Below, in pieces: positions 7,354 to 57,347 of a DNA stretch of 64,000 nt (its first letter is position 1; every line of letters starts with the position of its first letter). The notes beneath the pieces are model-generated. The model ran no database searches and was not told where the DNA came from. It was given only the letters and a program-made list of their open reading frames with translations. A program made the position numbers and the translations under genes. The stretch lies in assembly GCA_003693705.1 (NCBI GenBank), contig RBZT01000711.1, positions 4,335-68,334 of the forward strand, given 5' to 3'. This DNA comes from Polymyxa betae A26-41 (lineage: Eukaryota > Protista > Endomyxa: Phytomyxea).

Positions 7354-10300
7354 TGTTAAACGAGGCGAAGGGAGATTATGATTATCTAAAGAACTGAAGA
7401 AGTTTAATTGAGGTAAGCTCATTGTAGGTAAATTGTAATAGTTGATTCGCACATGAGTTAGTGTCTTGTGTCAACACGCCCCTTCGCTAAGGCCGCGTTT
7501 GGGTGTCGTTACGCACACCTTTCTGCGTAGAAATTTTCTATTTAGAAGCCAACTACACCTCCAAGATGTAGTGCGTTTTTCGTAAAATTTCTACACTTTC
7601 CTACATTCTTCTACGCAGAATTTGCGGATTCCAAACGCGGCCTAATCAATAGTGTGTGTTTCCGACCTGAGTCGTGGCTGTTGAGTAAAGGACATTGTGG
7701 CTGGATGCTGCGCCGCAGTTCGCAGTTTGAGTTGGGAACTCATAGGGTGCAGGGATGCGCTTCGAGCCATAGTTGATGAGTGTTGAACGATGTTGGTTGA
7801 GTACTCGTTCGTTGAGCGGATTGGTGAGGGCGTCGGTGAGCATCGCGGTCGTCGGGCTTAGCTGATTATGATCCGGCCTTCCGTGACCTTCTCACGTATT
7901 AAGTGATAACGAACGTAGATGTGTTTGGTTCTTGTTTTGTTGCAGTGGTTGTTCTCCAATAATATCACCCCTTGGTTGTTTTGAAAAAATGTTGACTTTT
8001 TCTTGTTTATGATGCCGACTTCGAAAAATAGGTTTTGTAGACATAAGGCTTCTTTTGTTGCATCACAAGCGGCAAAGTATTCCGCCACTGTGCTTGATAA
8101 TGTGACCGGCTTTTGTTTTGAGCTTTGCCATGATACAGTATTTTCTCCAAGCTTGTAATTCCATCTCGTGATGGATTTTCGATCGGCTTTATCTCCTGCG
8201 TAATCGCTGTCAGCCCATCCGGTTAATTCAAAGATTCTCTTTTTGAAGTTCAATCCGAATCCTTCTGTTGTTTTGATGTATTTGATGATGTGCTGAATCA
8301 AGTTCCACAGTTGCTTGCTGGGCTTTGTAGCATGTCGTGCGACTGAATTGACTGGGAAAGTGATGTCGGGTCTTGTGTTGTTAGCGAGATGCCTGAGTGA
8401 ACCAATTGCTTCTCTGACTGGGTAGCTTTTATCACTTTCGTTTTGGTCTTTTTCTGGGTCATAGATTTTGTCCTTCGGTGTTGATCGGCCTCTGGAGTTC
8501 TCCTGACCGAATATCTTTACAATCGAGCTGGCGTATTGCGTCTGAGTGAGTAATATGCCGTTGTCGGTCATTGTTGCTTCAATTCCCAAAAACTGCTTTA
8601 GGTTGCCTAAGTCCTTCATTCGGAATCTTGATGACAAAATTTTCTTGATGTTGTTGACTTCATTTCGGTCGTTGCCTGTGATGAGGAGATCGTCAACATA
8701 GGTGCCAATCAATGTCAGGCTGTTGTTGTAAAGCTTATGGAATATACAGGGCTCCTTCAGGGTTTGTTTGAAGTTTGCTGATTTAATGGCGTCGACGAGA
8801 TCATGCTGCCAGGCGCGTCCAGATTGTTTTAGCCCGTACTGTGCTTTGTTAAGCAGACAGACTTCTCCGCCTTGCTTGGTGAGGCCTTCGGGCTGCTGAA
8901 TATAAATCTGAATTTATAACGGGGCATTGAGGTAAGCTGTAGAAAAATCGTAGTGGTGGATTCACCAATCTTTGTTGACTGCGATGCAGATGAGGATTCG
9001 AAGAGATGTACCTGTGAGCACAGATGAGTAAGTTTCGTGATAATCGATTCCGTATTGTTGGGTGCAGCCTTTCGCAACAAGACGTGCTTCATAACGCTTT
9101 TCGCCATTCGGGAGTCGCTTTTTCGTGAATATCCATCGCGATTGAATTGCCTTCGTAAGCTCTGGTAGATTGTCAATGCCCAGGTTTCGTTTTTCTTATG
9201 TGTTTTCAGTTCCTCGAGTGCAGCTTCATGACATTTTGCCGCGTCTGGCATCGACATTGCCTCTTTGTAGGTTCGTGGGTATCCAGTTGATGTATGGGGT
9301 CCGTAAAGGTCCGTATCAATTCCATATTACTAAAATGGTTTCCAGAGGGTCAGTGCTGTTTTCAAGTATCGGTGAATTTGACGGGGCTGCAATAATGATT
9401 GTTCATCGAATGTAAAATCTCGTCGAAAGAATATTTTCTTGCTCTCAAGGTGTTGTAGGATATATCCCTTCTGGTATGGCGCCTAACCGAGGAATCGGCA
9501 TTTGATAGAAGTCGGCTGAATCGAGGTTCGGACTGATGGGTCAATATTCGCGTATACTGTACATCCAAAAGGCCTCAGGTGATTCATGTTTGGTTTGGCT
9601 CCGATCCAGAGCTCGTGTGGCGTGCGCCAGTTAATCCGGCGTGTAGGGAGGCGATTTAACGTGTACACTGCCTGATGCACGGCGAACGACCAATAATCGT
9701 ACGACAGTTTCGACCCGATCATATTCAACGCGCCATGGCCATGATGATCTGATTTCTTCGTTCGGCTTGTCCATTCTGTTGCGAGCTGTAAGGAACTGTT
9801 CGTTGATGTTTGATGTTTTTCTGAAGCAGAAATAGGCTCTTGTCCCGGTTGAAGTGTTCCCAGCCGCTGTCTGTTAACATCATTGCTACTCGCAGCTTCG
9901 TCTCCGCTTGACTGCTGGTGAAGAACCGCTTCATTGCGTTGAGCACTTCTTAGGCGTTGTTATGCTTCAGTAATCCGATACCTGTCCATGTAGAATAGAG
10001 GCAGTTGAAGATGATATAATATCGGAACCATTCGCGACTTGGTACAAAGAATGGTCCTTTGATGACAGATGAGATAATTTCAAACGGTCGTGTCGGTTTC
10101 GTTCGACGTTCCTTCGGGAAGGGCTGTCTTCTCGATTTTCCGTGTGCACATTCTTCGCAGAAGCTCCGATCTTTGCTGTTGACGCTGATGCCGTCAGTGG
10201 AATCTGGAATGTGCTGAAGACGCTCGTCTGATGAATGGCCAAATCGCCTGTGCGCCAGTTCCATGCTGATGCTGGAATTCGATTCGATAATGGAGATGGC

Positions 10301-11780
10301 GTTAATGGAGTCCGTTACGTTCTTCTGCTGTAATCACCGAATTGCCACTTCGATTGATGATCTTCAGCTTGTCCTGGATAAGCACGGTATATCCCTGTTC
10401 ACGGAACGATTTTGTGGCTAATAATGTCTTAGTGATGTTCGGTGCGAACAAGACACAAGACATTGTTGATGGTGATTGATGGATTTCCTGAAACGGTTAG
10501 TGATCCTGTTCCATATGCAAAAATTTTACCGCGATTGCTGGATGTGATTACGAGCGGCGTTTCGATGCCGTTGTAATTCTGGAGGATCGACTTCTCGTTG
10601 GTCATGTTGACGTTGGCCCCGCTGTCGATTAGGTACGTTTTTCGTTTCTGTCGGGTGCTGGTTGATGTGTGAAACCCTTTGAGCTCTGCAGATTCGTCAT
10701 CTGTCGTAACAGCGGTGTTGTTTGCCGCCACGGTCTTGGTTTTTCTTGAATTTCGATTGAGTTCTGGGCGTAAGATGCCGCATTCGCTGTTCGAGTGATT
10801 GTTCATCTTGCACTTTGAACAGAATTTTGTGGGCTTGAAGTTTTTCAGGCGGGAATTCAACGTTTTGATCTCTGAATTCAGGCAGTTGAGATCTGCTTGA
10901 GGGGCCAATACCGCGTCAGAAGATCCTGCGTCCCGTTCGGCTGATAACAACAAATTGGTCAGTCTTGGGATCGTGTTCACCTGCGACGCTCTTGCGGCAG
11001 TTTTGGTTTGCTGGTAAGTTTCCGGGAGACCTTCTAACGCTTTCGTGCATAAGGCAATTTCACCAATGATGATGTCATATGTGTTGAGGTCGTGGTATAG
11101 TCCAACAAGCTTGTCCAAAATATGATTTCATGGATTCAGTAGGTTTTTTCTTGAGGTGCATGAACTATAGGAATAACTTTGAAGCTTTGGATTCCGCACT
11201 TTCGTCATAAACTCCTTTGAGCGGCCTCCATATCTCGTTTGCCGTCCTGCATTGTGACACTTGTTTGTACTGAGCTTGAGGAAGCCGCATTAGTATCTGA
11301 GCGGCAGACAATTTGTCGTTCCGCGCTTCATGTCGAAGTTCGGCGTTAGGCGGGTGTTCTAAGTATGTCTCGATACACATAATCGTGAACTAGGTCTCGA
11401 GATTCCGCTTGAATTCTTCCTAAATAGAGCCATTGAATTGGGGGATGAGTTTGAGACCTGAGTTGTATTTCGCCAGGTCGACTTCGTCAGAGAGTCGATG
11501 GACCGAGGTTGAAGCTCGAATTCGACTTGAAAAATTGTTGGGCCGTTCGGACTTGGCTGTTTGGTGCTGGTTCATAATCGTCAGCGAAATGAGCGCTCGG
11601 ACGTCGGCTTATCGCTGGGACCATCGTAGCTGTAGAGTTCGAGTAGGACTCTTTATCTGTTAAACGAGGCGATGGGAGATTATGAGTATCAAAAGAAGTG
11701 CAGAAGTTGTATTGAGGTAAACTCATTTTAGGTAAATTGCCATAGTTGATTCACACATGCGTTAGTGTCTTGTGTTAACA
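7354..11780 (-). mobile_element. Full-length Ty1/Copia LTR retrotransposon (Copia-1), degenerate
   Basis: 123-bp TG..CA LTRs at 7354-7476 and 11658-11780 (14 substitutions). 5-bp TSD GATTC at 7349-7353 and 11781-11785. PPT AAGGGGCG. Order gag (CxxCxxxxHxxxxC) - protease (IDSGA) - integrase (QQNGQAER) - RT (YVDD) - RNase H (ADSDYA, TKHI). Confidence 0.97.
7491..7642. mobile_element. Tourist-like MITE (PIF/Harbinger), 152 bp
   Basis: Perfect 12-bp TIR GGCCGCGTTTGG/CCAAACGCGGCC, TAA TSD on both sides, and a subterminal inverted repeat TTCTGCGTAGAA/TTCTACGCAGAA. Confidence 0.92.
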
Positions 11781-19728: not shown

Positions 19729-22700
19729 TGTTTCTACGGAGAGTCGCTGTCGGGTTTTTAGGTAACTTTAGGTTGTTGTATTAACCATCAGCTCCTCGTC
19801 CAACGCATCCCCGCACGAGTCACGCGGCGTCATCGTGCGTGACGTCATGCCTGATCCTCGAAACAGCCGCCCTGATCTGACAGGCTGTCACGCACGCCGT
19901 ACTCATCGACCACGGACATCCCCGCCGCCTCCATCATCACAAACAAAGATTGAATTGTCGGCGCTTTCGTCAGTGCATACGCGGGATTATTCCGTCTCGA
20001 GACCGTCAGCAACTTAATGGTACCATCTCGAACACATTGTCGAACGACATGCCACTTGACTTGTATGTGCTTGTTAGCATCCGTGACTCCGACTCTCTCC
20101 GCCGTCGTCTTCGCAGCCGCCTTGTCCTCCATCAGGATGTTCGGACTCTTGATCACGAACCCGATTTCCGTCCGAAGTGTTCGCAAACAGACAGCCTCTC
20201 GCGCAGCTTCGCAAGAGGCGACATATTCCGCGTGACATGTAGATGTCGCCACGATACTCATGAGCTTCGATCTCCAAAAAACAGCTGTTCCAAACAGCAT
20301 CACTAATTGTCCGCCCACGGACTTCAGGGTATCTGGATCATTCGCGAAATCAGAATCGACAGCACAGGTTGGTTCGCTCCGATCAGCTCCATTCAAGCGA
20401 TGTACCGTAGAACGTGCACAACGGTGTCCCAGTGCTCCTCCGTTGGCAGTGAAACATATCGGGACAGAAGACTAATTGGGAACGCGATGTCGATTCTCGT
20501 TCCGATCGCCAGGTGACCGATACAACCCAGCAATTCACGATAGGGCTGAGTCGTCGCCACTTCTCCGCTTTACCGCGATCAATCCGCATTTTTAAACGCA
20601 GCGGTACTGTGAGAGGTCGCGCCCGCTTCCGAGTAGCCGACTTCACGGAATTCCGAAATCGCGCCAGTACATCACGTAGATACTGGGTCTGAACCAGCAC
20701 GTAGGCGAAATTGTTCTGCAACAGACGCATACCTATAACCCATCGTGCAATTCCGAGATCTTTTGTCTTGAATCGACCGGATAACATCTGATTCACCTCC
20801 GTGACCATATCCGAGCTCGTTCCGAAGATCAGAAAATCATCGACGGAAACACCCAAAAACCACGATTTGGCGCCCCCGCCGCGAAACATTGAGGCATGGA
20901 TCGCTAATTGTCCTCTTAAAGTTGACCTCAACCAGGACTCCGTGTAGGGTCTCGTACCAGATCCGTGGTGCTTCAACCAGGCCGTGCAGCGCTTTCTTTA
21001 ACCGCCATACCTTTTTCTGCGGGTCTCCAGTCTCAAACCCGTGAGGCTTCTCGCAGAACACAGCGCAGTCCAGAACTCCGATCAAGAAGGCTGTTTTAAC
21101 GTCCATCAGGTGAATCAGTACACCGAACATAGCCGCCAGCTGGATGATCACCCTCAGAGAAGCATACCGAAGGGTCGGCGCAAACGTCTCCTTCCATGTC
21201 TTCCACGGATCGCAGCATCCGAGAGGAACATAAGGCGCTTTCCACCGTACGCATTCACCGTGCTCATTTCGCTTCCATGTGTAAACAAATTTCGCAGGTA
21301 AAACATTCGAATCGGTCGGTCGGTCAACCACTTCATCGCAGTCATTCTCAATGATGGCGTTGACTTCCTCGATCTCGCCCTCATTCCAATGCTGCCAGTC
21401 CACGCTCGCGCGCGCCTCCGCTTCCGACTTGGGGTCGGAACGCACTTCAGGGACTTCTCCCGTCAGAAAGGCAAACAACCCGTTGTCTGCTGTATCGACC
21501 GAGCAGTATCACGCCCGGTGGCCGTCATCACGATCAAAATTAGCCTCGTAGAAGATGTCCTCATCATCTTCCTGCTCTTCCTCGGCCGAAATTGGTTCGA
21601 CCGCTTCGGTGATCTCCGACCAGAAGATCTTATCCCGAAGCGCGTCCGCTGCCGATTCGTCGTTGTCTGCTTTCTCACTGTCGCCGGATCCATCATCTTC
21701 GTCGCCTGCTTCCTGTCGCGCAGCGCGAGCCATCCCGTCGTAATCAGCATTTGCGAAGCGATCCGGCTGATGGCGAATCCGTCCGGAGCGTCGCAGTCCA
21801 TGCTGCTCGACAGTGTCGGTGCGTTCGCGCTGATGAAGGTCAGGACCTCCACCGGCAGCACAATGTCTAATTCCATCATCATCGCGGTCCCCAACTGGCC
21901 GTTCGATTTCGTCGGGACCATTATCATGACACTCTTGCGGCCGCTGATGGGCCGTAGCTCCACCATCGTCACTAACGCCGCCCTGAGCAGCGACGCCATC
22001 GTCAGCGTCACCAAGGTCGTCGTCCAAAACGTCCACGTCGAACATGCCGCCGAGCACGGCCGCCCTCTTGACTACGTCCGTCTCATTGTCGCCGTCCTTG
22101 AACGGGAACACGGACTCATAGAAGAAATCATTCCTCGACTCCAGGATCTTCCGACTTTCCCAGAGAAGAAACACGCACGCCTTTTTGGATGCTGAGACAG
22201 CCAGGTGAACCGCGCGCTCCGCCTTCGGCTTCAGCTTCGCCTTATTCCTACGGAGTATCAACACCCAGGCCTCGCAGCCCCAAACCCTTGCTCGAGAGAG
22301 GTTCGGGCGCTGCCATGTGAGGACCTCAAAAGCCGTCGTTTGCCCGTGATGACGATCGAGAGGAACCCGATTATGGAACCATGTCGCATTCATCGCGGCG
22401 CTCGACCAGAACCGCTCCGGCGCAGCCGATCGGACCAGACATGCACGCACCATTGCGACGATCTTGCCGCCGATGACCTCTGGGAGGCCATTCTGGAACG
22501 GCATACGCGTGTGCGAGAATTCCTGCTGTATTCCGTCCAAATACAACTCCTGACGCTGTACATTACCGACGTACTCGCCACACTGATCGGCACGGAACAC
22601 CACCACCTGTCCGGACATTCTCTCGAATCTCCGTAGAATCGCGACCGTATGATTCTCCGTGTCGGACTTCCGCGCCAGATTCACCGTAGCCGCAAATCCA

Positions 22701-24473
22701 GATGCATGATCGACCCAGACGCCCATATACAGTTTTCGGTCATGGCTCCTGGTTGGAAACGACAGTAGGTCGGCTCCGATAATCTGTGCAGGCCGTAAAC
22801 TTCGAGTGCGGCGCTTCGGTGCCGGGGCCACTTTGAAGTTCGCCTCAATACATATCCGACATTTGCATCTTGGTACATGATCCACGCAGTTGATGCGCAG
22901 TCCGCCCACGATCGCGTTCCTGTTCATTTTTAGAAAGGTTTGTAAATTAGTGTCACAGAGTCTCTCGTGGGCAAGCTTTAGAGAGATCTCTCCAGATAAT
23001 CGTCCTTGGTTTGGATCGTTGCTGAGGGAGACCAAGGCGGCTCCCCGCAACAAAAATCCTGCCCAGCGTGAAGGTCCAAATACTGTAGACCTCTGCGCAC
23101 AGATCAAGTCAGCAGGAGCTTCCCGTCTTTGTTTACGATTTTCGAGGAACGCGCAGTCTCACGGTGTTCGGAGCCCTTCCCGAGCTTAGAAAGTGCCGCC
23201 CTGATCGCGAACAGATTCGCGACGGAGTCAGGGGCATAACTGGCATCGAATGAAATAACTCTGCCCGACGCAGTCCGTAGGACGATCCCTCCCCGCCCGT
23301 GGATGTAAATGCGGTCTCCGCCGACACCACCGACAGTGGGCCGCTCATTCGTCTCGAACAACTTCAGATTGCTGCAATGTTCCTTGCAGCTCGAAATTTG
23401 TGCACAAGTTACGGCGCCATCCATGACCCAGTCACGGACTCCTTTCCGCGGAGTGCTTCCGCTTGACAGTGCCATAGTCAACATTGCGATATGAGCATGT
23501 CCGCCTCCATTATCGATACCGTTGCCTTTGCAATCCGTCGACCGGTGACCAAACTTCTGGCACTTCCAGTAATTGCCCCTAAATTGGCCCACATTACTAC
23601 GTCCTCGGCGTCCTCCACGACGTCCACCCGAAGCCTGCATGGCATGACCACTGTCAGCGCCGGACGCCTGATCCGTCACCGCCATTCGCCTCAAGAGCCA
23701 CACGACGTCGTCACGGATATTGGTCGGGATCAACTCCGCATAATTTCCGGAGAGGCTTTTGTAACGGATCTGCTCCATGTCGTTCGGGAGCGACATGCAC
23801 ATCAGCACAGCGATGACTTAATCAGGCAGAGAACGATCTTCGTCGATCACTCTGAGACGCAAGTTCAAATCCTTCATTGACTAGAAGTGAATCTTGGCCT
23901 CTTCAACGGTAGCGTTCTCGTTCAGCCTCTTTCCGAACAACTCAATAAGGAGTGTCGCCATATCCTGGTTAGAGGAACCGGCATACTCCTTCGACAGCGC
24001 CTCCCATGCACCCGCTGGGTCATTTATGTGAGCCTTGATCAAGGTCAGCTGATTTAACTCCACGTTCCGAGTGATGGCTAGCATCGCCTTGGCATTTTTC
24101 ACAGGATCCGATGCAGCCGCCTTTTTCGAGTTGTCGACGTAATCGCCCAGCCCGTAGGCAGTTAACAGGGTCATCATCGCGAATCTCCATGACGTGTATA
24201 CGTTTCGGCCATTCAGCTTGAAGCCAATCGACAGATTTTGGCTACTGCTGGCATTCTGAGAGCCAGCGCTGGTGTCATGTTCCGAACCGGTCGTCATCGT
24301 CTCGCTTGATAGGTTGATGAGCTGGGACTCTTAATCTGTTTCTACGGAGAGTCGCTGTCGGGTTTTTAGGTAACTTTAGGTTGTTGTATTAACCATCAGC
24401 TCCTCGTCCAACGCATCCTCGCACGAGTCACGCGGTGTCATCGTGCGTGATTTCATGCCTGATCTTCGAAACA
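19729..24473 (-). mobile_element. Full-length Copia (Copia-2), GC-rich
   Basis: 137-bp LTRs at 19729-19865 and 24337-24473 (5 substitutions). Near-TSD GGCCT/GTCCT. PPT AGGGCGGC. gag 23881-24297, knuckle/protease 23104-23808, integrase 21509-23107, RT 20383-21478 (SVDD), RNase H 19845-20396. Confidence 0.97.
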
Positions 24474-24958
24474 GTCCTGCTCACATTCGCACCACTATCG
24501 ATGATGACTGCTTCGACATTTTGTTCGTTCCGAGTTTCTCTATGGAAGCCTCGTCTTCTTCTTCTTCGTTGACATTGCTGTTCGCTTGTCCTGTTTGTTC
24601 GTTGCCTTTGTATTGTCGAAGTTCCGGATGTTCGATCCAGCATTCATCGATGTTATGGTTTGTTCTTCTAAACCGCGTACAACGTTCTATCTTGCTTTTC
24701 AGGTCTTTGATCTGAGTATGCAGTGACTGGATATCTGCTTTTAGATCCTTTTGGTCCTGGTCTTGCTTCCCGGATTCATGCTGTTCATCTCGCTCTTTTG
24801 AGAGCAGGATGTTCGTCAGTGGCGGGAATTTGCTTACTTGCGATGCTCTAGCCACAGCCTTAACTTGCTTGTACGTGTCCAGTAGTCCGTCAAGCGCTGG
24901 ACGCAGATGATCAATTCTCCTAGTTCAATATTGAAGGATTGCACGAGTTTGTACAAAA

Positions 24959-27900: not shown

Positions 27901-29786
27901 CGTCTAATAGCAAAACTCTAGGCTTGAGATCGGGAATCTTGGCCTATCAGAGAAAGAATTCAGAAAAGTTGTCGTGACAGCAATACGTTACTGAACTCAC
28001 GCGGAGACTGCAAAATAAAGCCCTTAAAGCGACTTTATTTTCACGCGATGTGACACAAAAACACGCAGGATATCCTTGATTTGCCAAAGGATCGATCACC
28101 ACAATAGTGATCAGTTTAAATCCATACGCGTTTGTGCCATGTGTTGAATCGATGGCCCAGCCCCGGTCCCCGAATTTGAAAACAGATGTACTAAATTTAC
28201 TAAACGTTGATTCCAATAACATATATACAAACTCTTTCATAAGCTCGTACATGAACTCAGTCTGGATGACGACGCAGAACTCGCTTTGTTCGAATCCGTA
28301 TCGCAAAGCGTCACATACATAAGCCGCTAATATTATCAAAATTGGTAAATACACAATGCGAATAGATAAAAATTAACACATACCTATGTACAATACGACC
28401 GGATTGTAGTTTTCTTACTGTAACATATTCCTGATGAGGCTGTCGGTTAAGTCCACGTCCTGCGCTTCCAATCCCGTTGTCTTGAAAACTTTGGATTTGA
28501 TGTTGAGAACATCCTTCATGGTCACCAGGAAACCTCGGACGTCACCTTTCTATACAAGTTTTTGAAATCGTTGCATTAACTGTATCGGATTGATTACCTG
28601 GGTCACATTTTTCCGTTCGTTGCGATCGGACCAAACCGCATTGCAGTTTCTGACGATTCGATCGGGTGGAATCCCCAGCCGGAGTTGCTGAGCAATATGC
28701 TCAGAAACGTGACCCGACAGCTTGAGGAAGTGTTGTTCCTCTAACGATCCCGACTTGTGTCCAGAATGATCCTGGATATGATCGACGGCGATCTCTCCAG
28801 ACAGCTCTCGCCTGACGTACATTCGCGCTAAACATCAAGACGACAACTTACAGGATTCCTTCGTGAACAGCGCCTTCGAATCGTCGCTCTTTTCGTTTAT
28901 GGCCTGACCCTTTGGGAGGTTTTCTGGCGAACGCCTGCAGACCAAGACCTGGGTCTTTGAACTTGGGCCGTTTACAGCGACGTTTGCTTCCCCTTTGAGC
29001 TCGCTTTTGAATCTGTGATGCAGGAAATCAGGTTCGTGCTGTCAGCAGTTCAGATCACGTCACTTTTGGAAATCGTGCTGATTGTTGAATTTATATATTG
29101 TTCGCCTAATGGTTTCGTGTTCGTGGTCCTAAATATTCATATAAACAAATGATAATTTGAAAGAAACGAAATAGAAATGATTACCTTTTGACAATGAAAC
29201 AGTACACCCAGGACCGAATCCAAATTCGAGCGGTCGCAAAATGGACCGAAGAATGCCAGAGACATTCGGCCGTGAATTTCTGGCTGAATCGATTCAACCA
29301 ATGTTTTCCTACATTCATGTCGAACTAATTAGGCATAATAATTGCCACAAGTCGCGCAGAGATCTTTCATTCTGTTCGAGTCGTGGGTCTTTCTATGCCT
29401 TTCCAATTTACTCCGGTACGGAAACGATTTTTGGCACCCATCGAAATCACATGAATATGATCTCTTATAAATAGGCGGTACGAATTGGTTATTTTCCATA
29501 CCGTTCGCTGGCGATGCGCTGAGCTCCATGGATATTCAGACAAAGGAATAAAACAAGTTGATGTTCTAATCGATTCGCACAGAATACTCCAATGACAAAA
29601 GTGAGGATTTTATTCACAAAAGAATTAGAAAAATGCCATATCACACTCAGCGTGCCGCTAGTACTTCCAGTCCCAGGGCCTTTCTTTTGACGGCAACCCG
29701 CTGCCGGGAAAGTTCAGAATTTAGTAAACCTCGATACCAAACCCCGTGGTTCCTAATAAAATCGTCTCTCAAAAGTGACTCGCACT
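24959..29786 (-). mobile_element. MULE (Mutator-like) DNA transposon with short CAG-terminated TIRs
   Basis: Termini CAGGGCGAGTCACCTT and AAAGTGACTCGCACTG. Interrupts Copia-3 gag, which resumes on both sides. Confidence 0.75.
26430..29529 (-). pseudogene. Multi-exon MULE transposase with N-terminal C2H2 zinc finger and C-terminal SWIM
   Basis: CDFDGCQKSF..LERHRKTH; HSGH; IDSTHGTNAYGFKL..GYP; LLDDD; HLFCVWH; TTGHCESWH; CTCHDY..HHCKHI. GT-AG introns, e.g. 27944-28000 (57 nt). Confidence 0.9.
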
Positions 29787-30317
29787 GTAGGTTTTCATGT
29801 GTTGATTTGGCTCCTTCTTATAGTGGATAAATTGCAGGAATATGCTCGCTGCCTTTGATTCCGCAGTCTCTTTGTCAATGTCTTGCAGTCTTTTCCATAT
29901 TTGGTAAGTGTTTTTACAGGACGATACTAGTTTGTACTGGGATTGTGTCAGTCGTAAGCATATCCGGGCAGAAGCGGACTTGTCTTTCCGTAACTCTCTA
30001 GGGTTTCGGGGGCTCGGATCATGTTTCAGATGGGTATCAATTCCCATTATAGTGAACTGAGTTTCGACTTTCCTTTTAAAGTCCTCCCAATTGCATCCGT
30101 TGAACTCGGGTATGAGTTTCAGTCCAACGCTTTGTTTTGAACGGTCCACTTCCTCCTGCAGATAAGGAAATGATTGAGGCATTCCACTGTCTCGGTTTTC
30201 TTGAGCATTATTTCGTGTGTTCGCTTGGCTGTTAGCTCCGCTGCGGGCGTTAGATTCAGTCATTATGAGAGCGAACTCTGACTCTTAATCTCTTAGGCTT
30301 AGCTATGTTAACACGCG

Positions 30318-39260: not shown

Positions 39261-41159
39261 ATGATGCAATCCAACTTTTTACAGGGTGGAGAACTGTCTG
39301 GACCCAGAGCTGATGCTGATTCTTCATTGCTAAGATCAACAGCTGCTGTAGATGATATATCAGATACAATATCAACTTGGTCCATAGTGATATTTTTCTG
39401 CAAAATTTTGCTAGAGTCGACAGTCTGTGAAACAGTTTGAGGGACGATTTATTGGGCTTCGAAAAGTTTGCAGGATCTTTATCAATGACTGTAAGCACCA
39501 GGAGACTCCCCCGAATTTTTGAGATGAAAAGTCTTTCACTCACAGACTTTTAAAGCCTTTTGCGGACATCTTTATTGGATATCAAATTTCGCATAGATCT
39601 TTGCAAATGAACTCAGTCCGAGTTCGATCCGTCTCTTCTTGGCCAGAACCTACCTGCATGAAAGAGGTGCAATCCTTTCTTGGTTTTGCCAATTTTACAG
39701 ACAATTTATTTGTGAATTCGCCAAAATCTGTTTACCTCTTGACGCATTAACACGAAAGGACGTCGAATCCAAATGGGATGCGTCGTGTAGCTGGTCCTTT
39801 CAGCAGCTTAAAACCGCGTTCATTCCAGCACCTATATTGTCCACTTTCGACCCTTGTTTGCCGTTAATTGTCGAAACGGATGCATCTGACTATGCTATCG
39901 GCGCGATTCTTTCACAGACTCATAGCGATGGAGATCACCCGATCGCTTTCTTTTCTAGGAAATTAACATCAACCGAACTCAGCTACGAAGTTTACGAGAA
40001 AGAGCTGTTAGCGATTGTTGGTGCTTTCATGAGTGGAGACATTTTCTTAACGGTGTTAGCAAACCTGTGGTAGTCTGGAGCGACCATCGGAACCCGCAAT
40101 GGTTTATGACCTCGAAAAGATTTAATCGACATCAGGCTCGCTGGTCGATCTTCATGTCTGAATTTTCGTTTGTTATTCCGCATCGGGCAGGCTCACTGAA
40201 TGCCAGGGCGGACGCTTTATCACGCCGGTCTGATTACATCACTAAGACTGCTGCCACCCTGCCTGTACTTGACTCTAAATTATTCATCAATAGCATATCT
40301 GTTACCACAAACTCTGCAGATCTAGATGAACTACGCCATTATCTTCTCAACATAAGCTCGACAACTACGATGAAAAGCAGTTCTCGTTTGATAAAGGGAC
40401 GCTTTACTTTAAAACGCCAGCTCAAAGCCGACCACGCGGCCCGCCTTGATGTCCCGAGGTTAAGGCACGATTCCGTTCTTGCCGGGCATTTTGGCGTTTC
40501 TAAGACCTCTGATCTGGTAGCACACGACTATTGGTGGCCAAACATGAGTACTACGATCCGCGATTACGTTCTGTCTTGTGATGTTTGTGCACGGTCGAAA
40601 AGGTTCGCAAAAAACCTGTCGGATTATCATTGCCGCTTCCTATGGAATCTAAGCCATGAATTCAATTTCCATGGATTCAATCGTTAAGATCCCTCGTAGC
40701 TCCCATTATGATTCTATTTTAGTCATTGTAGATAGATTCACAAAAATGGTCATTTCATTCCATGTAAAGAATCCTTGACCAGTTCAGACCTTGCTTTATT
40801 TGTAGTTTCCAGCTGTGTAAAATTACATGGTCTGCCTGACAACATAGTTTCAAACAGGGGACCCCAATTCGTCAGCAAGTTTGGAAAAACCTTCTCCAAC
40901 AACTCGGCATTCAACGAAACCTTTCCTCAGCACGCCATCCAGAATCCGATGGACAAACAGAACGGGTAAATCAAATACTTCAACAATATTTGCGATGTTT
41001 TGTTATTGTTTCGCAAGACGATTGGAGTTCGCTTCTCGCAATGGCTGAATTCGCTTATAATAACAGCACACGCCCCTCTTTTAAATTTAGCCCTTTCTAT
41101 GCTAATTACGGCTATCACCCTCGTTTTGATTTCCGGTGTGCTGCATCTGGCTCTTTCTC

Positions 41160-44100
41160 GCGTCCAATAATCAGCGATCTTCGCATCGCGGCAAACGAGG
41201 AGGGCGTAAATTTCAATCCAAACCCAAAACGGAAGATATCATTTGTAAAAGATGTCAAGAAAAAGGGCATTACGCGAGTGACTGCACGGCACCGGCGCCA
41301 AAACCGAAGCCTTTTAAGACTGAGACTTCTTTCGCCGCATCGTTTTTCGGAAAGGTCGCCGAGCCGGAATGTGAAGCTAAACAGCGATGGTTCATAGACT
41401 CAGGAGCCCGCGCTCACATGACTGGTGATAGCTCGCTGCACAATGATGACGTTAATCCTACCCCATCTTCCACCTGCGTGACGATTGGAAACGGCTCAAC
41501 CATGAAGGCGGAATACTTTGCTAGCGCTTCTGCTGGACCTGTGAAATTGCAGAACGTTTGGTACATACCCGGAATGGCTGCAAATTTGATCTCTGTTGAT
41601 AAGGCAGGGTTGACGAAATTGTGTTCAAGCGGAAATCGATGTCTGTGCTATTTACCAAAGGTGGATCCGTTATTGCAACTGGTTCCAGAAGGGCAAATTT
41701 ACTCGCCCTCGAGAATCAGACCGCTGTTATGTGCGATACAGAACCGAAACCAGCTCGAGCAAAACCAACTGATGATTATCATGGCTGGCATCTTCGTCTC
41801 GGCCATTTACATTACTACGCCATTCGTCAATTAGCAAAACCTGGAATTATTGTTGTCACTGGAAGTATTCCCAGCGTGCCGTGTGAAGCCTGTTTACTAG
41901 GAAAAACAAGTCGACTCCCATTCGGCAATCGTCCCCTGCCAATTCGTTCAAGTTCACCTTGTGAAATCATTCATAATGATGTTTGTGGCAAACTTCCCAC
42001 AACTGTACTGCGAGGCGAAAACATTTTTGTTACCTTTATTGACGATTTTTCACGTTTTTCGGCAGTTTATGCAATCCGCAGCAACGCCGAGACGATTACA
42101 AAATTCAAAGAATTCGTCTCCGCTATTGAAACGGAGTTGGGAACAAGGGAAGTCAAAACACTAATTTCTCAGATAACGGGGGCGAGTACATAGTCGACGA
42201 GTTCGTGGCCTATTTGAAAAAAAGGGAATTCGTCACGAGAGAACACCTCCTTATACCCCTCAACTAAATGGAGTCGCCGAACGCGCCAACCGAACGCTAA
42301 TGGAAATGGCAAGATCTATGATGGCGCCGATAGACTGCCCGCGCTCATGGTGGCCCGACGCGATAATCTATGCAGCTTATGTTCGCAATCGGGCGCCTTC
42401 CCGATCAATCAATGGCGACACTCCTTACCACCGTCGTTTTGGTAAAATACCGAATCTTGAAATGGTCCACACATTTGGTTGCTAAGCTTACGCCATGATT
42501 CCAGATGAGCATCGTAATAAGCTCGACTACAAAGCACAACCATGGAGATTCATCGGTATTGCTCAAGGCGAAAATGGGTACCTGTTACGAACCTCAGCTG
42601 GAACTACAATCATGTCACGCGAAGTTCGAACTTTTCTGGATAAGCCCAATCTTACGCCACCCTATACAACACCTACGGTACCTCATGAGGAGGGAATCAC
42701 TGACGAAAATGATGTTACTATCTCCGATTCTTCTGATATCGATGAACATGCGGATGACGAAGATGTTGTATCTGCCGACCTTGAGGATACAAAAGCTGCC
42801 AAATCAAACGAACATACATCACAAGATCCTCAGAACGTGAGCTCTACCAGGTATGGCCGTCGAACCTATGCACCGCTGCGTTGGATCGACGAAGTTCATT
42901 GCACATATAGTTACTCAGCACGTGAACTCTCGCTTTCAGCACCAGCATCCTATCATCTGGCTGTTACTGGTCCGGATCGTGATGAATGGCTCGCTGCAAT
43001 GACGAACGAAATTGAAAGTATGGAACGCAATAAGACCTGGGAATTGGTCGTACCTCCCAGAAATGTAAATTTTTTGGGCTGCCGGTGGGTCTACAAAATC
43101 AAGACCGATTTAGATGGAAACGTAGACAAATACAAAGCTGGCCTAGTCGCACGTGGTTTCTCCAAAGTCCATGGCGCTGATTACACCCACACATTTGCTC
43201 CGGAAATTTCTCTTGCGAGCCTAACAATATTTTTCAGTATAGCCGCTTCGCTTCGGGTACGACCTCATCACCTCGATGTGGTTACAGCATTTCTGAATTC
43301 GCCGCTATCTGAGACCATTTACATGCGTCAACCGCAGGACTTCGAAAAGCAAGGACAGAATGGCGAACAATTGGTTTGCAAATTGAACCGAGCAGTCAAT
43401 GGCCTGAAACAATCAGGTCGTGAGTGGTGGAAGACCGTTTCCAACACACTTCTGGAAATAGGTTTCAAGCCGACTGCCGCAGAGCCTTGCCTTTTCTTTC
43501 GTGGATCTTGTGATCTGATCGTTATTCTCGCTCTATACGTTGATGATATTGGAATTGCAACTAAAGATATGAATCAATTACAGGAAATCAAATCGACTTG
43601 GCGTCTAAGCACCGCATCAAAGACCTCGGCGAAATGTCCATCATTTTGGGCATGAAAGTGGACTTTGATGAAGTCTCCGGATCCATCACTTTATCACAAA
43701 GTGCTTACATCGAGCAGATCCTGAAGAAATACGAGGTGACCAATTGCAAATGAGCCGTGACACCGTTGCCAGGAGGGACCGTTCTTCTCCCAAATTCTGA
43801 CGATGAGAAGGACAATAACTTACCTTACCGTGAATGTATAAGCAGCTTAATTTACGCATCGAGCTCTACACGTCCAGATACCTCTGTCGCTGTTAATTTA
43901 TGTTCGCGTTTTGTATCAAATCCTTCTAAAATGCATGTCACTGCTCTACAACATATTCTTCGCTATCTTCGCGCTTACCCAGACATCGGCATTACATTCT
44001 CTGACAAAACACGCAATGGCAACCCTCAGCTGCACGTTTACGTCGATGCTGACTGGGCTGCTGATCAACATTAGAGAAAATCGATTTCTGGTATCGTTGG

Positions 44101-52473: not shown

Positions 52474-54764
52474 GGCAAGGTACCAAGATTGCAGCAGAAT
52501 CGCCGGAGGGCGCCTCCGTATCGTTGGAGCAGTCCTTCGAATTTTTTACAGTATGTTTTCATTGTACGGACTTTACGGATGTTCGGGGGTTTCAACGTAT
52601 CATTGGAAAAAATGCGTGAAATATCATACGTTAGCTTTACGGACGCTTATAATGTAACATTACAGTTTCAGCAGAACAGCATATACAATAACATCATTGG
52701 ACGCAACAGAGAGAGCAATACAGCAATTTGGAAATTTACCCATCTGTTACAATTTGACACAATCCGACTCAGAAAACCCCATTTAATCAACGGATTAAAT
52801 CTCAAATGCGCTCTATTGCCCACATGATATTGAAATCGCTTGAATCGCTTCCAGAATTGTCTCAAACCAAATTGAGACCCATTATTTTCTCATACAATAA
52901 GTCAGTAATCATTCTAAATGAAAATCTTACTGTAGATTTCGCCTCTTCTACCACCATGCAATCAGAGCGAATTCGATCAATCTTCGCTAGATCATCAAGG
53001 GTTTGCTTCTCAGCAGCTTCCAGGCTCTCAACGTAATGTTTGTCCATGCCGGATGTCGAACTACAAAGATCTTTGTGTAAGCTCCAACCTTTTGATAGAA
53101 ATAGTTAATGCTTTATATATCAGATCTTAGAGCCTTTAAATATTCAACTCGGAGATCGAAATTCATCAGGCGCCAAAAAGTTCATGTTGTTGAGTCGCGC
53201 TACGCCGGTCCACACAAGAATGCATATGTAACATAGACCTAGTTATATCTAACCTGAGTTTCCGTTTTGATCTCTGCAAGACTTTCGATGTCACCCTGGC
53301 GGCCTGATCTGTCTGTATCTGGGTCTTTTGATGCCTTGCCACTGTGGTTGAAGAGCTATATATAGCAACGAGTCTGACTCTGTGACGGGTAGCGAAAACG
53401 TTTTTTATCCATAAAATTCATCAAACTGTTTATAGTTGAAGAGAACCCAAGCTAGCATAGAAAGAACATTCATCCAAAGAAGAGAAATGCTTCTTCAACC
53501 GCTCCTCCGCTTCATCCTCTGATAAAAAGGGATCTTGCCCACATTTTGGGAACGCATTCGCTTTTGTTCGGCGCTTAATATGCTCTGCATTGTAAGCTGC
53601 GAAAACATTTTCAATAAATGAAGTTAGCTCTTCACGGGTAACCGTGAATTTGGCACCAACAGGAACAGATCTAATTCGCGTCCAACGGAGGTCATCATAC
53701 TCCCGTCGGATTTGTTCTTTGAGGCAGCGGTTTAGAGCAACGTCACCTACCTAATCCAATTTAGTTAGGCGATACATTCAAAACTCCTCGTTGCCATACC
53801 TTCATTGCTGATGTCACACCCTCAGAAATGAATCGAACGAGGATTTTGCCCTTTGATTTTGCGTTGTGTTCAGAAATCCTATCCTCGATGTCAGGTCCAT
53901 AATGTGCGGCGGCTCTATCCCATATCAATCCTATAGCCATGTTAACAGCATATCATGTGATTTGGTTCAATCATTACCAAGCGTACGATCAGGGAACAGA
54001 ATTGTCAGCCAATGCAGAAAAATGCTATTTTTTTTGTCATCCAGTGCGACTCCGATAAGACCACAACGCTCTTGCTATAATGCGCCCATTGCCTCATCAG
54101 AGTTGCTCCAAATTTCGCCGTTCCGATAATGAAAGATGGGAGCAACGAAGATGTGGTCAGGTCGGCTGCCACAGCAAGGGTGATCCCCGATTTGGGATCA
54201 TGAGGCCGGGCTGGTCCTGCCACACGTTTTGACCCCTGAGGAACCAAGACGGTCTCACAGGATTCATGAAAGCGAATGAATGTTTCGTCCATTGATGTGG
54301 TCTACGTCAGCATCCCTGAAGTCCTTCCTGATTGCTGCTGATTTGCTATTGCGATCTCTCTCCAGGTTTAAGTACAACCTGAGATACTGTCTCTTTTCGG
54401 TTGGCCCAACGGTTTCTTTCCAACACCCTTTGAAACCAGTTGTTAAACCTAGGTGGCATGCAGTGTAAGTTCGAAAAGTAGTGATGTCGAGAATTCACTA
54501 CAGCTTTCTGCTCTTCACCAGTTTCTGAAATCCTTCATGACGACAACCGGTCAATCGGATTCTATTCACTGTGATCGGAATACCTCGATCGTATTCCGTT
54601 TGATAAGCTCCAGCAAAAAATGTTCTTGTTCAGGATAACCTGTCGGTTTTCCAAGCTTTTTTCCTTCTTTTGCCAGCCTTTGCGTTTTTTGATTAACGTA
54701 TTTAACACATTCTATTTGCTTCGCCAGACTCGCCATTTTCTGCACGCTCATCGCTCGTTCATCA

Positions 54765-57347
54765 TTTTTCGTCAAAACTGCTTGTACAGATGCATTCCCA
54801 TTTCGTTTCCGGCATATATATAACCAAAACCTTTTCTGGAAATTTGTTAGACCCATCAATCGTTTGAGGGCTTCTGATTTTTCTCTTAGGAAAAATACTT
54901 CAGCATAGTGAGAATACTGGTCGAGTACGATCATGGCGTACAGCTCGCCGTCAAATGCGGGAGATTGGCGCAAAGGTCCGCAAAGGTCCGTGGATACTCA
55001 TCCCAGTGTCTCGGTCGCTTTCGCACTCTTTGAGTGCGTTCGAAAGGGGTTCGAGTTCCTTTTCCGTGAATACAGGACTCGCAACGGAAATTATTCCGAT
55101 TAGTTACTTTCATACCGTTGGCCATTTGTTTTCGCCAGAGAAGTTTTAGGCGATCTCTACTAATGTGGCCAAGGCGAGCATGCCAGAGTGCTTCGGAAGC
55201 AGAATTTGCGGTCATGCAAATTTTGTTTATTTGTTGCGATTTTATGTTGGATACAGTACCAGTCAAATAGTACAGTTCATTCCCTTCGTTCGCCGACAGC
55301 AGCTATGAGTTTATGCTCGACTGCTGTATAGAGTAGTACGCGATCATATTGCAACATGCAGACTATGCCGCTGTCCGCAACTGCCCTTAACGAAAAATAA
55401 TTTCCGGAAAGCTGGGGAATATAATTCACGTTTCGTAGGTTCAGAATGACTGAATCACGTTTTGATGGAGACCGTTCCAGTTCCTTCTACTGAATTTTCA
55501 GAATTATCAGCCATTTGAACTCGACGGCTACGGTCGGAGTATGGAGTAAAATTGACAAATAAATTTTTGTCTCCTATAGCGTGGCTTGTGCATCAGCTAT
55601 CAACTAAAAATTCTACATAAAGGAGATAAGCATCAAATTTGTCAAGTTTACTTTGAATTTCTTGATCGATCAGGGAACCGATTGTTCCTTTCTTTGAAGG
55701 TTGTTGGTCGGTTCGCTCAGTCTTTTTTGACTCCTCATATTTGCGCTTCCTGCAATCTTCTCGGACATGGTTTTTCTTTTTGCAATAAGTGCAAAAGATT
55801 GTCCCGGAAGTTTTGCTAGCTGAGGGTGTAGACTTGGCTGGTTTGTGTTGCGCACTTGGAAGGAGGCTACGCTCGAGTTTGAGATCATGTTTGATCTCAG
55901 ACCAAGTCATTCGTCGTCGCAGGATCTCCTTTTTAGATGTATCGTCCGGGAATTTCCGGGCGATACGGAGTCCGAGGCGCCGATATTCAACCCGGTCGTG
56001 ATCGCCAATGTCAATCAGCTCGGATCGAATTCGATCCACAGCTGTGATGAATCTGTCGACGTGGGCTAGGTTCGAGGGAAATTTCAGGTTGTCCATCTCC
56101 TCGTTGAGCTGCATTATAGTGGCCTCGCGGAGGTCACTTTGTGCAGCGCCGTACTCCTCCTCGAGGGTATCAAAAAGGCAGCGGTGTCATGATGACGAGC
56201 CGCCGGCAGGAGAAAACCGTCAAGCTGGTTGCGCACGTAGCCGAGGGCTGCGCGGTCCGCGACGTGGAAAGCGGAGTCGCTGCCCGGAGGGCAACGGCAG
56301 AGGCCGCTCGAATCAGATGCTGGGCAGCGCTTATGTCCGAAGACAAAAGCGCTCAATTTGGTGCACGCCAGGTTGCTCGTCAACCGGTCTTTCCAGATCA
56401 CGAAGTTGCTCACGCCTTGCAGAAGCTGGTTCTGCTGGAGCGGCGGAGGGCATCGGATCTGGTGCCAGTTGGGAGTCGGCGTCATCGTGGCGGGCTACGC
56501 CGTGGGCTCGGTCACTGGAGCTGCGGGCTCCGGGATCTCCGAGCTGACGGCGATAATAGCCGGGGGTTGCGCCTCGGAAGAAGTGCGCTCCGTGGTGGGG
56601 GCTGCGCCCGTCGTGGACGTGGGCAGGGTGACAGGGGCCGGCTCTGCGGATTGGGCTGTTGTGACCGTCACATCGGGCGTGGCCTCCTGCACGTGAAGTT
56701 GCGCGAGTTGGCCTAGCGAATGGTTGATGCCATTCAGTGTGGCCATGAGCATCGGTAGCCAGGACGGTCGTTCGGATGTGGGTCCGGCTGAGTCCGTGGA
56801 GGAAGAGGCTTCCGTGCTGTGGAGTTGGTCGCGCTGTACTACAGGTACCGTTGGTGTGGAGAAGAGCCGCAGAGGCATGACGTAGCCAGTGCCTCCTGGA
56901 GTTGAACGGAACGCTGGAGTCCCGTCGATCGGGTTCTGCCTCGGTACTGGTGGGGCTGCTTGATTGGGAGAGGCAGCTGCTTTGCTTTGCAGAGGTGTTA
57001 GCGTTGAGGAGGCCCATAACCTGTTGGAAGTCGTGCGGATAGTAGGAATTCTAATAAAGCAGATGTAGTCGATATATCGGGAAATGAATTGTGTCCATTT
57101 ATTTCCATTTATTCACGACGGAAGGTCTGATCGGGACCAAAAAGGGCAGTCTTGACCTGAAAGGGAAGTCTTGACTCGTCGGACTGCGGGATCGATCCTG
57201 AGTCACCTTCTGATCAAACACTAAAACCCTAATTTTCATTCCAACATTTTTCGTCAAAACTGCTTGTACACATGCATTCCAATTTCGTTTCCGGCATATA
57301 TATAACCAAAACCTTTTCTGGAAATTTGTTAGACCCATCAATCGTTT
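54765..57347. repeat. 101-bp direct repeat (54765-54865 and 57247-57347) flanking Copia-4
   Basis: Direct comparison shows 2 mismatches. Both copies are pogo coding sequence. Confidence 0.95.
54866..57246 (-). mobile_element. Copia-4: 5' LTR, gag, protease and partial integrase; 3'-truncated
   Basis: LTR TGTTGGAA..TTCCAACA at 57022-57246. PBS GGTTATGGGCC (half-tRNAiMet type) at 57011-57021. CTYCKKKNHVREDC and WHARLGH..CESC. Breaks at REKSEA in integrase. Confidence 0.9.

What the first reader, a model, noticed from the sequence alone, without database searches (positions are those of the whole stretch)
24319..24336. Copia elements apparently primed by the 5' half of tRNA-Lys(CUU)
Seen: directly inside the 5' LTR, the + strand reads GAGCTGGGACTCTTAATC in Copia-2, TCTGACTCTTAATC in Copia-3 (30277-30290) and GAGTAGGACTCTTTATC in Copia-1 (11641-11657). 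On the element strand this is GATTAAGAGTC..., not the usual TGG. Known: GACUCUUAAUC is the anticodon arm (positions 30-40) of tRNA-Lys(CUU). Drosophila copia, Ty5 and other hemiviruses prime from tRNAiMet cut in the anticodon stem (PBS GGTTATGGGCC). Copia-4 in this window has exactly that PBS, and both PBS types end at the same position. Inference: at least two divergent Copia lineages here use a cleaved elongator tRNA-Lys half as primer, possibly exploiting host tRNA halves. I cannot confirm how far this is already described.
Basis: partly seen in the sequence, partly recalled or inferred. Interest (0 to 1): 0.8.

Follow-up and report, generated by a model that had tools for sequence, protein, structure and literature searches.

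The report
Copia retrotransposons primed by half tRNA-Lys
Many Copia retrotransposons in this plasmodiophorid genome have a primer site matching the anticodon arm (bases 27-40) of the spliced host tRNA-Lys(CUU), so they most likely start reverse transcription from a cut half-tRNA; this trick is already described with other tRNAs, and with tRNA-Lys in fungi, so it is a solid but not new kind of finding.

Summary
Directly after the 5' LTR of Copia-2 (minus strand) stands GATTAAGAGTCCCA (window 24336-24323). The same 14-mer follows an LTR end in 68 places of the 27-Mb genome, in 34 families whose flanks are otherwise unrelated.

It is the exact complement of bases 27-40 of host tRNA-Lys(CUU), but only after the tRNA's intron at 37/38 is removed. 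All 12 or so genes carry that intron. The second primer-site type, GGTTATGGGCCCAG, complements bases 27-40 of the host initiator tRNA-Met, so it has the same footprint and the same 3' end at base 40. That is the published primer end of hemiviruses.

I tested and rejected self-priming, the 5' exon as primer, and a site written for tRNA-Lys(UUU).

Half-tRNA primers other than iMet are published for Candida (Arg), plant Bianca (Ile) and rust fungi (Tyr/Ile/Asp/Asn, also across intron sites). Fungal FunCo1 Copia use tRNA-Lys (PBS ATTAAGAGTCT).

New here are the host group (a plasmodiophorid, Rhizaria), the scale, the CUU specificity, the exact 14-base footprint, and signs of switching between Lys and iMet primers. 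No primer molecule was observed. The scan had noted the same idea on an overlapping window (s1-684349).

The parts
24323..24336 (-). Copia-2 primer binding site, GATTAAGAGTCCCA; exact complement of bases 27-40 of spliced host tRNA-Lys(CUU)
24337..24474 (-). Copia-2 5' LTR (138 nt, TG...CA)
19729..19866 (-). Copia-2 3' LTR (96% identical to the 5' LTR)
23104..23808 (-). Copia-2 first ORF in the gag position (no Pfam hit)
21509..23107 (-). Copia-2 integrase ORF (rve, SH3_retrovirus)
20383..21478 (-). Copia-2 reverse transcriptase (RVT_2), split over two frames, so this copy is broken
11644..11657 (-). Copia-1 decayed primer site GATAAAGAGTCCTA (2 mismatches to the 14-mer)
11658..11780 (-). Copia-1 5' LTR
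7354..7476 (-). Copia-1 3' LTR (89% identical to the 5' LTR, so an old copy)
7858..8712 (-). Copia-1 RT/RNase H ORF (RVT_2); 32% identical to Copia-2 RT
30277..30290 (-). Copia-3 primer site; 11 bases (30280-30290) match tRNA-Lys(CUU) 30-40, the next 3 do not
29769..30263 (-). Copia-3 gag ORF (Retrotran_gag_2)
57011..57021 (-). 'Copia-4' primer site GGTTATGGGCC; complement of host tRNAiMet bases 30-40 (the full genome-wide form is 27-40)

Best explanation
These are Copia-type LTR retrotransposons that prime minus-strand DNA synthesis from a 5' fragment of host tRNA-Lys(CUU) ending at base 40, as hemiviruses do with tRNAiMet.

Shown: the 14 bases right after the 5' LTR are the exact complement of bases 27-40 of the spliced tRNA. 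That span covers the whole 5' strand of the anticodon stem, the loop, and two bases of the 3' strand. The site is invariant across dozens of families whose flanks have diverged. A second set of elements carries the same 27-40 footprint written for tRNAiMet.

Inferred: the mature, spliced tRNA is cut between C40 and C41, or is used after such a cut. Its 3'-OH at base 40 is then extended into U5. The enzyme that cuts is unknown. Pairing stops at base 27, perhaps because G26 is usually dimethylated in eukaryotic tRNAs; that point comes from general knowledge and was not tested.

Because two unrelated tRNA sequences give the same footprint, the choice of tRNA seems to lie only in the PBS sequence. 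Lineages appear to have switched between iMet and Lys.
For: - Element type: RVT_2, with integrase before RT, plus Retrotran_gag_2.
- Position: LTR identity ends exactly where the motif begins.
- Copy number: 80 genome hits against 8 control.
- Conservation: 68 hits continue with CCA to give the 14-mer, in 34 flank clusters. Information content drops to zero at base +15, and the base before the site is the LTR's terminal A in 94% of clusters.
- Host tRNA: the tRNA-Lys(CUU) genes read ...GAGCG TGGGA CTCTTA[13-20 nt intron]A TCCCA.... The spliced form gives 14/14 pairing at offset 0. The unspliced gene gives 11 at offset 3, and no other held tRNA exceeds 7.
- No intronless gene was found.
- Isoacceptor: the UUU version of the 14-mer occurs only in the six tRNA-Lys(UUU) genes plus one other place.
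- iMet type: GGTTATGGGCCCAG is the complement of host tRNAiMet 27-40, with 72 hits against 7 control.
- Published hemivirus primer end is the 3'-OH of nucleotide 40 (PMC1181622).
- Outside this genome: six environmental or NCBI relatives at 42-66% Pol identity keep the same 14-mer after their LTRs, while three at 37-43% have the iMet form. The two groups separate on a tree.
Against: - No primer molecule, tRNA 1-40 fragment or tRNA-linked strong-stop DNA was seen. The two raw-read RNA runs held no reads of the organism.
- The evidence is complementarity plus conservation only.
- A G:U pair at base 34 would let tRNA-Lys(UUU) bind almost as well (-19.3 against -21.9 kcal/mol).
- t6A37, expected in this tRNA from general knowledge, should weaken pairing.
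- The genome-wide survey was seeded on the exact 11-mer, so only the last three bases (CCA) and the flanks count as unconditioned conservation.
- I held 34 tRNA sequences, not the full set.
Confidence: 0.8

Rival explanations
1. The primer is a half of tRNA-Lys(UUU), or both isoacceptors serve, with a G:U pair at wobble base 34.
For: tRNA-Lys(UUU) is identical to tRNA-Lys(CUU) at bases 27-40 except base 34. The predicted duplex is only 2.6 kcal/mol weaker.
Against: All 68 sites carry G opposite base 34, which is the Watson-Crick partner of C. The A version occurs only in the tRNA genes themselves plus one other place. If UUU were the usual primer, some families should carry A.
Confidence: 0.06
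2. The 5' exon released by tRNA splicing (bases 1-37) is the primer.
For: Every tRNA-Lys(CUU) gene has an intron at 37/38, so a ready-made 5' half exists in the cell.
Against: The site begins with GAT, which pairs with bases 38-40 of the 3' exon. There is no class of junctions in which TAAGAGTCCCA directly follows an LTR end. tRNAiMet has no intron here, yet it gives the same 27-40 footprint.
Confidence: 0.02
3. Self-priming as in Tf1: the site pairs with the 5' end of the element's own transcript.
For: None specific. It is a known alternative for LTR elements that lack a TGG-type primer site.
Against: In 63 copies, the 400 nt upstream hold no piece of TGGGACTCTTAATC longer than a shuffled control gives (longest 8 against 9).
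Confidence: 0.01
4. The conserved 14-mer is not a primer site but another cis signal (packaging, dimerisation or translation) that happens to mimic the tRNA arm.
For: No primer was observed directly.
Against: The position is exactly that of a PBS, with zero spacing from the LTR. A parallel motif written for tRNAiMet sits at the same place in sister elements, and that motif is the experimentally proven primer site of copia and Ty5 (as cited in PMC10886601 and PMC1181622).
Confidence: 0.03

Closest known systems
Hemivirus-type priming (Drosophila copia, 1731, yeast Ty5, Volvox Osser)
   Same: These are Copia-superfamily elements. The PBS abuts the LTR and is complementary to the anticodon stem-loop. 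The primer's 3' end is at nucleotide 40 (PMC1181622; Kikuchi 1986 and Ke 1999 as cited in PMC10886601). The iMet-type elements of this genome match this exactly.
   Different: The tRNA here is the elongator tRNA-Lys(CUU), not tRNAiMet.
FunCo1 Copia clade of Pezizomycotina (Donnart et al. 2017, PMC5445492)
   Same: The PBS ATTAAGAGTCT is reported as complementary to an internal region of tRNA-Lys. Ten of those bases (ATTAAGAGTC) are also in the site seen here.
   Different: The hosts are filamentous ascomycetes, not a plasmodiophorid. The last bases follow the fungal stem (TCT...) rather than CCA. That paper gives one sentence, with no footprint, isoacceptor or intron analysis. Kinship of the proteins was not tested here because I held no FunCo1 sequence.
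Rust-fungus Copia and Helenus elements (Kojima 2024, PMC10886601)
   Same: [quoted passage not shown] That paper concludes that the mature, spliced tRNA is the primer, and it reports repeated primer switches.
   Different: tRNA-Lys is not among the anticodon-loop primers reported there. The hosts are fungi.
Plant Bianca lineage (1/2 tRNA-Ile) and Candida albicans elements with an internal tRNA-Arg(UCU) PBS
   Same: Half-molecule elongator tRNA primers in Copia elements (PMC6317226, PMC4139406).
   Different: Other tRNAs and other host kingdoms.

Membership tests
Ty1/Copia superfamily (Pseudoviridae) | RVT_2-type reverse transcriptase, with integrase upstream of RT in pol | tested here: met
   Copia-2: rve and SH3_retrovirus at 21509-23107, RVT_2 at 20383-21478, on the minus strand. 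Copia-1: RVT_2. Copia-3: Retrotran_gag_2.
Ty1/Copia superfamily (Pseudoviridae) | Direct LTRs ending TG...CA that flank the coding region | tested here: met
   A clean 5-bp target duplication was not seen for Copia-2.
Half-tRNA-primed Copia (Hemivirus sense) | PBS directly after the 5' LTR, complementary to the anticodon stem-loop, with the match ending at tRNA base 40 | tested here: met
   14/14 pairing with bases 27-40 at offset 0. Conserved in 34 families.
Half-tRNA-primed Copia (Hemivirus sense) | The primer tRNA is the initiator tRNA-Met | tested here: not met
   The Lys-type elements match tRNA-Lys(CUU). Only the second set (72 genome hits, including the window's site at 57011-57021) matches tRNAiMet.
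Half-tRNA-primed Copia (Hemivirus sense) | A cleaved tRNA fragment shown to be the primer in particles | not testable with these tools
   There are no small-RNA or VLP data. The raw-read runs had no reads of the organism.
FunCo1 clade | Phylogenetic placement of RT/RNase H within FunCo1 | not tested
FunCo1 clade | Host restricted to Pezizomycotina | tested here: not met
   A Nop56 fragment next to a host tRNA gene is 68% identical to Plasmodiophora brassicae Nop56, its best named hit. The only close hit of the Copia-2 integrase is a 1-kb 'Beta vulgaris' contig.

The most novel reading that the evidence does not exclude
In half-tRNA priming, the tRNA may be chosen only by the PBS sequence, while the cut at 40/41 is set by tRNA structure. 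Related Copia elements could then hop between primers by a few substitutions.

Three signs point this way. (1) iMet and Lys give identical 27-40 footprints. (2) One genome copy (C790) sits with the Lys group by RT similarity but has the iMet motif at the PBS position. (3) An environmental member of the Lys clade (L182) reads GATTAACAGTC, one base off, as would fit an Asn(GUU) arm.

Several of the same families also insert 8-12 bp upstream of tRNA genes. These Copia elements would then depend on the tRNA system twice: for priming and for targeting.
Probability: 0.35. Interest if true: 0.5.

Novelty: new member of a known kind. Interest (0 to 1): 0.33.

Why it matters
It extends half-tRNA priming with an elongator tRNA to Rhizaria. 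It also gives an unusually clean natural data set: dozens of families in one genome, with two primers sharing one footprint. That data set could be used to ask what makes the cut at base 40 and how primers are switched.

It also has a practical side. LTR annotation tools that look only for matches to tRNA 3' ends, or that match against unspliced tRNA genes, will report these elements as lacking a PBS.

Tried and rejected
- **Self-priming:** rejected.
- **5' exon as primer:** rejected.
- **UUU-type PBS:** absent from elements.
- **Asn-like variant GATTAACAGTC:** not enriched in this genome.
- **Standard tRNA-Lys(CUU) pattern:** it found nothing because the genes carry an intron. This was solved.
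- **The one genome hit of GGACTCTTAATCC:** not a tRNA.
- **RT tree of this genome's own copies:** I used coordinates and similarity to two outside references instead. That is weaker than a tree.
- **Repeat 54760/57242:** not the LTR of 'Copia-4'. No RT lies next to that element, so its superfamily is not shown in the window.
- **Protein atlas:** gave no usable taxon.
- **Word search with the Copia-2 integrase:** gave a single hit.
- **Full-text search for the motif letters:** gave only unrelated primers.
- **Reads:** X21 and X22 held no reads of the organism, so they are no test. X19 gave one 222-nt contig on the gag side of a 12-copy family, which is weak evidence of transcription.

Full report
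**What is there.** The window is a nest of transposons: Copia, a chromovirus-type Gypsy, and PIF/Harbinger. Earlier first-reader notes, which I did not check, also list a MULE and a Tc1-like element.

- Copia-2 has 138-nt LTRs at 19729-19866 and 24337-24474. The two copies are identical up to ...GTAGAAACA. After that the 3' copy runs into flanking DNA and the 5' copy reads GATTAAGAGTCCCAGC. Its ORFs carry rve/SH3_retrovirus upstream of RVT_2, which is the Copia order. The RT is split over two frames, so this copy is broken.
- Copia-1 has LTRs at 7354-7476 and 11658-11780, 89% alike. It continues GATAAAGAGTCCTA. Its RT is only 32% identical to that of Copia-2.
- Copia-3 reads AAGA|GATTAAGAGTCAGA and has a Retrotran_gag_2 ORF just downstream.

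So the strings, the coordinates and the position 'directly inside the 5' LTR' are all right.

**More than chance.** In the 27-Mb assembly, GACTCTTAATC occurs 80 times against 8 for the reversed control. I fetched all the junctions.
- 68 of 79 continue with CCA, giving GATTAAGAGTCCCA.
- They fall into 34 clusters whose 40 nt on either side are unrelated.
- The base before the site is the LTR's terminal A in 94% of clusters, with consensus AACA.
- Information content falls to zero at the fifteenth base.

The survey was seeded on the 11-mer. Only the CCA, the sharp edges and the diversity of the flanks are free evidence of selection.

**The tRNA.** A standard pattern for tRNA-Lys(CUU) found nothing, because the genes have an intron. 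Twelve genes read ...GAGCG-TGGGA-CTCTTA[13-20 nt]A-TCCCA-AGGCT..., with the intron at the canonical 37/38 site. No intronless copy exists.
- The spliced tRNA pairs 14/14 with the site at offset 0 from the LTR, over bases 27-40.
- The unspliced gene gives 11 bases at offset 3.
- The best other tRNA among the 34 I held gives 7.

So the site spans the splice junction and can only have been selected against the mature tRNA. The first three bases, GAT, pair with bases 38-40 of the 3' exon. That excludes the 5' exon (1-37) as primer, and no junction class lacking GAT exists.

tRNA-Lys(UUU) differs only at base 34 within 27-40. The version of the 14-mer that would pair with it is found only in the six UUU genes and one other place. 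The elements are written for the CUU isoacceptor.

**The second type.** GGCCCATAACC occurs 72 times against 7 control. Three of the ten loci I read are tRNAiMet genes (A54, three G-C pairs in the anticodon stem). The others are LTR junctions of the form ACA|GGTTATGGGCCCAG followed by unrelated sequence. That 14-mer is the complement of tRNAiMet bases 27-40.

Both types thus share the footprint and the end at base 40, and in both tRNAs the implied cut lies between C40 and C41. A published description of hemiviruses puts the primer 3'-OH at nucleotide 40 (PMC1181622).

The window's 'Copia-4' site (57021-57011) has 11 of the 14 bases. I found no LTR pair and no RT next to it. Its superfamily is therefore not shown in the window, though genome copies with this PBS type are Copia.

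**How many lineages.** I matched the integrase hits to the PBS lists by coordinate. This gives 14 Lys-type, 9 iMet-type and about 25 unassigned copies.

Lys-type copies other than Copia-2's own small group (65-100%) are only 24-28% identical to the Copia-2 integrase. That is the same range as iMet-type copies (23-28%).

I then compared RT-RH with two outside references.
- Thirteen Lys-type copies are 44-61% identical to the Lys-type reference P0122 and 33-43% to the iMet-type reference P0164. For four of them, only the P0122 figure is listed.
- Three others (C730, C797, window Copia-1) are 32-35% against 36-40%, so they belong elsewhere. C844 matched only P0164 (38-40%) and points the same way.
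- Most iMet-type copies that matched lie nearer P0164.
- C790 carries the iMet motif exactly where its PBS should be, yet it is 48% identical to P0122 and 40% to P0164.

It does indicate several deep lineages with the Lys site, and at least one likely switch.

**Outside this genome.** One metagenome scan for AACAGATTAAGAGTCCCA gave 18 hits. One of them, L164, is a complete Copia with a 1350-aa open frame. Using that polyprotein I fetched DNA for ten relatives.
- Six relatives at 42-66% identity all have LTR|GATTAAGAGTCCCA. One of them comes from an NCBI assembly.
- Three at 37-43% have LTR|GGTTATGGGCCC.
- On a quick maximum-likelihood tree the Lys elements form one clade (SH-aLRT 99) and the iMet elements another (91). 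Copia-2's integrase is a long branch outside both.
- One member of the Lys clade (L182) reads CAACA|GATTAACAGTCG just before its ORF. That is one base off, opposite base 34. From memory this would fit a tRNA-Asn(GUU) arm. It is untested, and that variant is not enriched in this genome.

**Host.** A Nop56 fragment next to a tRNA gene is 68% identical to the Plasmodiophora brassicae protein, its best named hit. The only close relative of the Copia-2 integrase in the word search is a 1-kb contig filed under Beta vulgaris. That would fit a root parasite of beet, which is my inference. The genome is a plasmodiophorid other than P. brassicae. I cannot name the species.

**Mechanism and rivals.** The best reading is hemivirus-type priming by a 5' fragment of mature tRNA-Lys(CUU) ending at base 40.
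- Shown: the position, the exact complementarity, the conservation, the isoacceptor specificity, and the parallel with the proven iMet case.
- Inferred: the cut, its timing and its enzyme.
- Self-priming is excluded: the LTRs hold no complement of the site beyond a shuffled control.
- Caveats from general knowledge: t6A37 should weaken pairing, and pairing may stop at 27 because G26 is usually dimethylated.
- No fragment or tRNA-linked cDNA was seen. The two raw-read RNA runs had no reads of the organism. One root-metatranscriptome contig lies on the gag side of a 12-copy family.

**What is known.**
- Half-tRNA priming defines the genus Hemivirus (PMC8515867, PMC1181622).
- Non-iMet halves are published: internal tRNA-Arg(UCU) in Candida (PMC4139406), 1/2 tRNA-Ile in plant Bianca (PMC6317226), and anticodon-loop sites for Tyr, Ile, Asp and Asn in rust fungi. 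The rust study explicitly notes that the sites span intron positions and so imply the mature tRNA (PMC10886601).
- I found no paper on PBS types in plasmodiophorids.

The finding is therefore a new member of a known kind. New are the host group, the numbers, the exact shared footprint, the CUU specificity and the hints of switching.

**Verdict.** Novelty is modest, and interest is 0.33.

Noticed in passing
L091, L094, L101, L116, L121, L129, L107, L108, L130, L138 (genome loci around Lys-type junctions): In ten copies from four Copia families, a tRNA gene lies divergently just outside the 5' LTR. The genes are Phe, Arg, Leu, Glu, Lys-UUU, Gly, Arg, Ser, Thr and Leu. The mature 5' end of the tRNA is only about 8-12 nt from the first TG of the LTR. 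That spacing is about that of a pol III start site, so these Copia elements may target tRNA genes with Ty3-like precision.
   Followed up: partly
L061:1471-1557 and eleven other loci: Every tRNA-Lys(CUU) gene of the assembly has a 13-20 nt intron at 37/38, while the six tRNA-Lys(UUU) genes have none. One copy (C649) has a duplicated CTCTTA at the exon-intron border. Two copies (C214, C937) have different introns, and C214 also has a changed 3' stem (ATCACA); they may be pseudogenes.
   Followed up: partly
L182:200-230: An environmental Copia nested in the Lys-PBS clade reads CAACA|GATTAACAGTCG before its ORF. That is one base off the Lys site at the position opposite anticodon base 34. It may be a single-substitution switch to a tRNA-Asn(GUU) half. 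Its LTR end could not be confirmed because the contig ends.
   Followed up: partly
G000:C790:19157-23424: This copy has RT-RH 48% identical to the Lys-clade reference and 40% to the iMet reference. It carries the iMet motif at exactly the expected PBS distance. It is a likely primer switch, but the DNA could not be fetched.
   Followed up: no
window 40067-43655: A Copia fragment (zf-CCHC, Pol_BBD, RVT_2 on the plus strand) begins inside a Gypsy integrase ORF with no LTR or PBS visible upstream. This looks like a nested or truncated insertion.
   Followed up: no
window 54760-54865 and 57242-57347: A 106-nt direct repeat, 97% identical and 2482 nt apart, is not the LTR of the neighbouring iMet-PBS element. 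Its nature is unexplained.
   Followed up: partly
L175-L180, L164 (metagenome contigs of 4.4-4.8 kb): Many relatives are contigs of almost exactly one element length, holding one LTR plus an intact 1350-1500 aa frame. One (L175) starts at the first TG of the LTR. These may be transcripts, circles, or assemblies collapsed on the LTR.
   Followed up: no
P0121: The only close database relative of the Copia-2 integrase (58% identity) is a 1063-nt contig filed as Beta vulgaris. It is probably DNA of a root parasite within the plant assembly.
   Followed up: no
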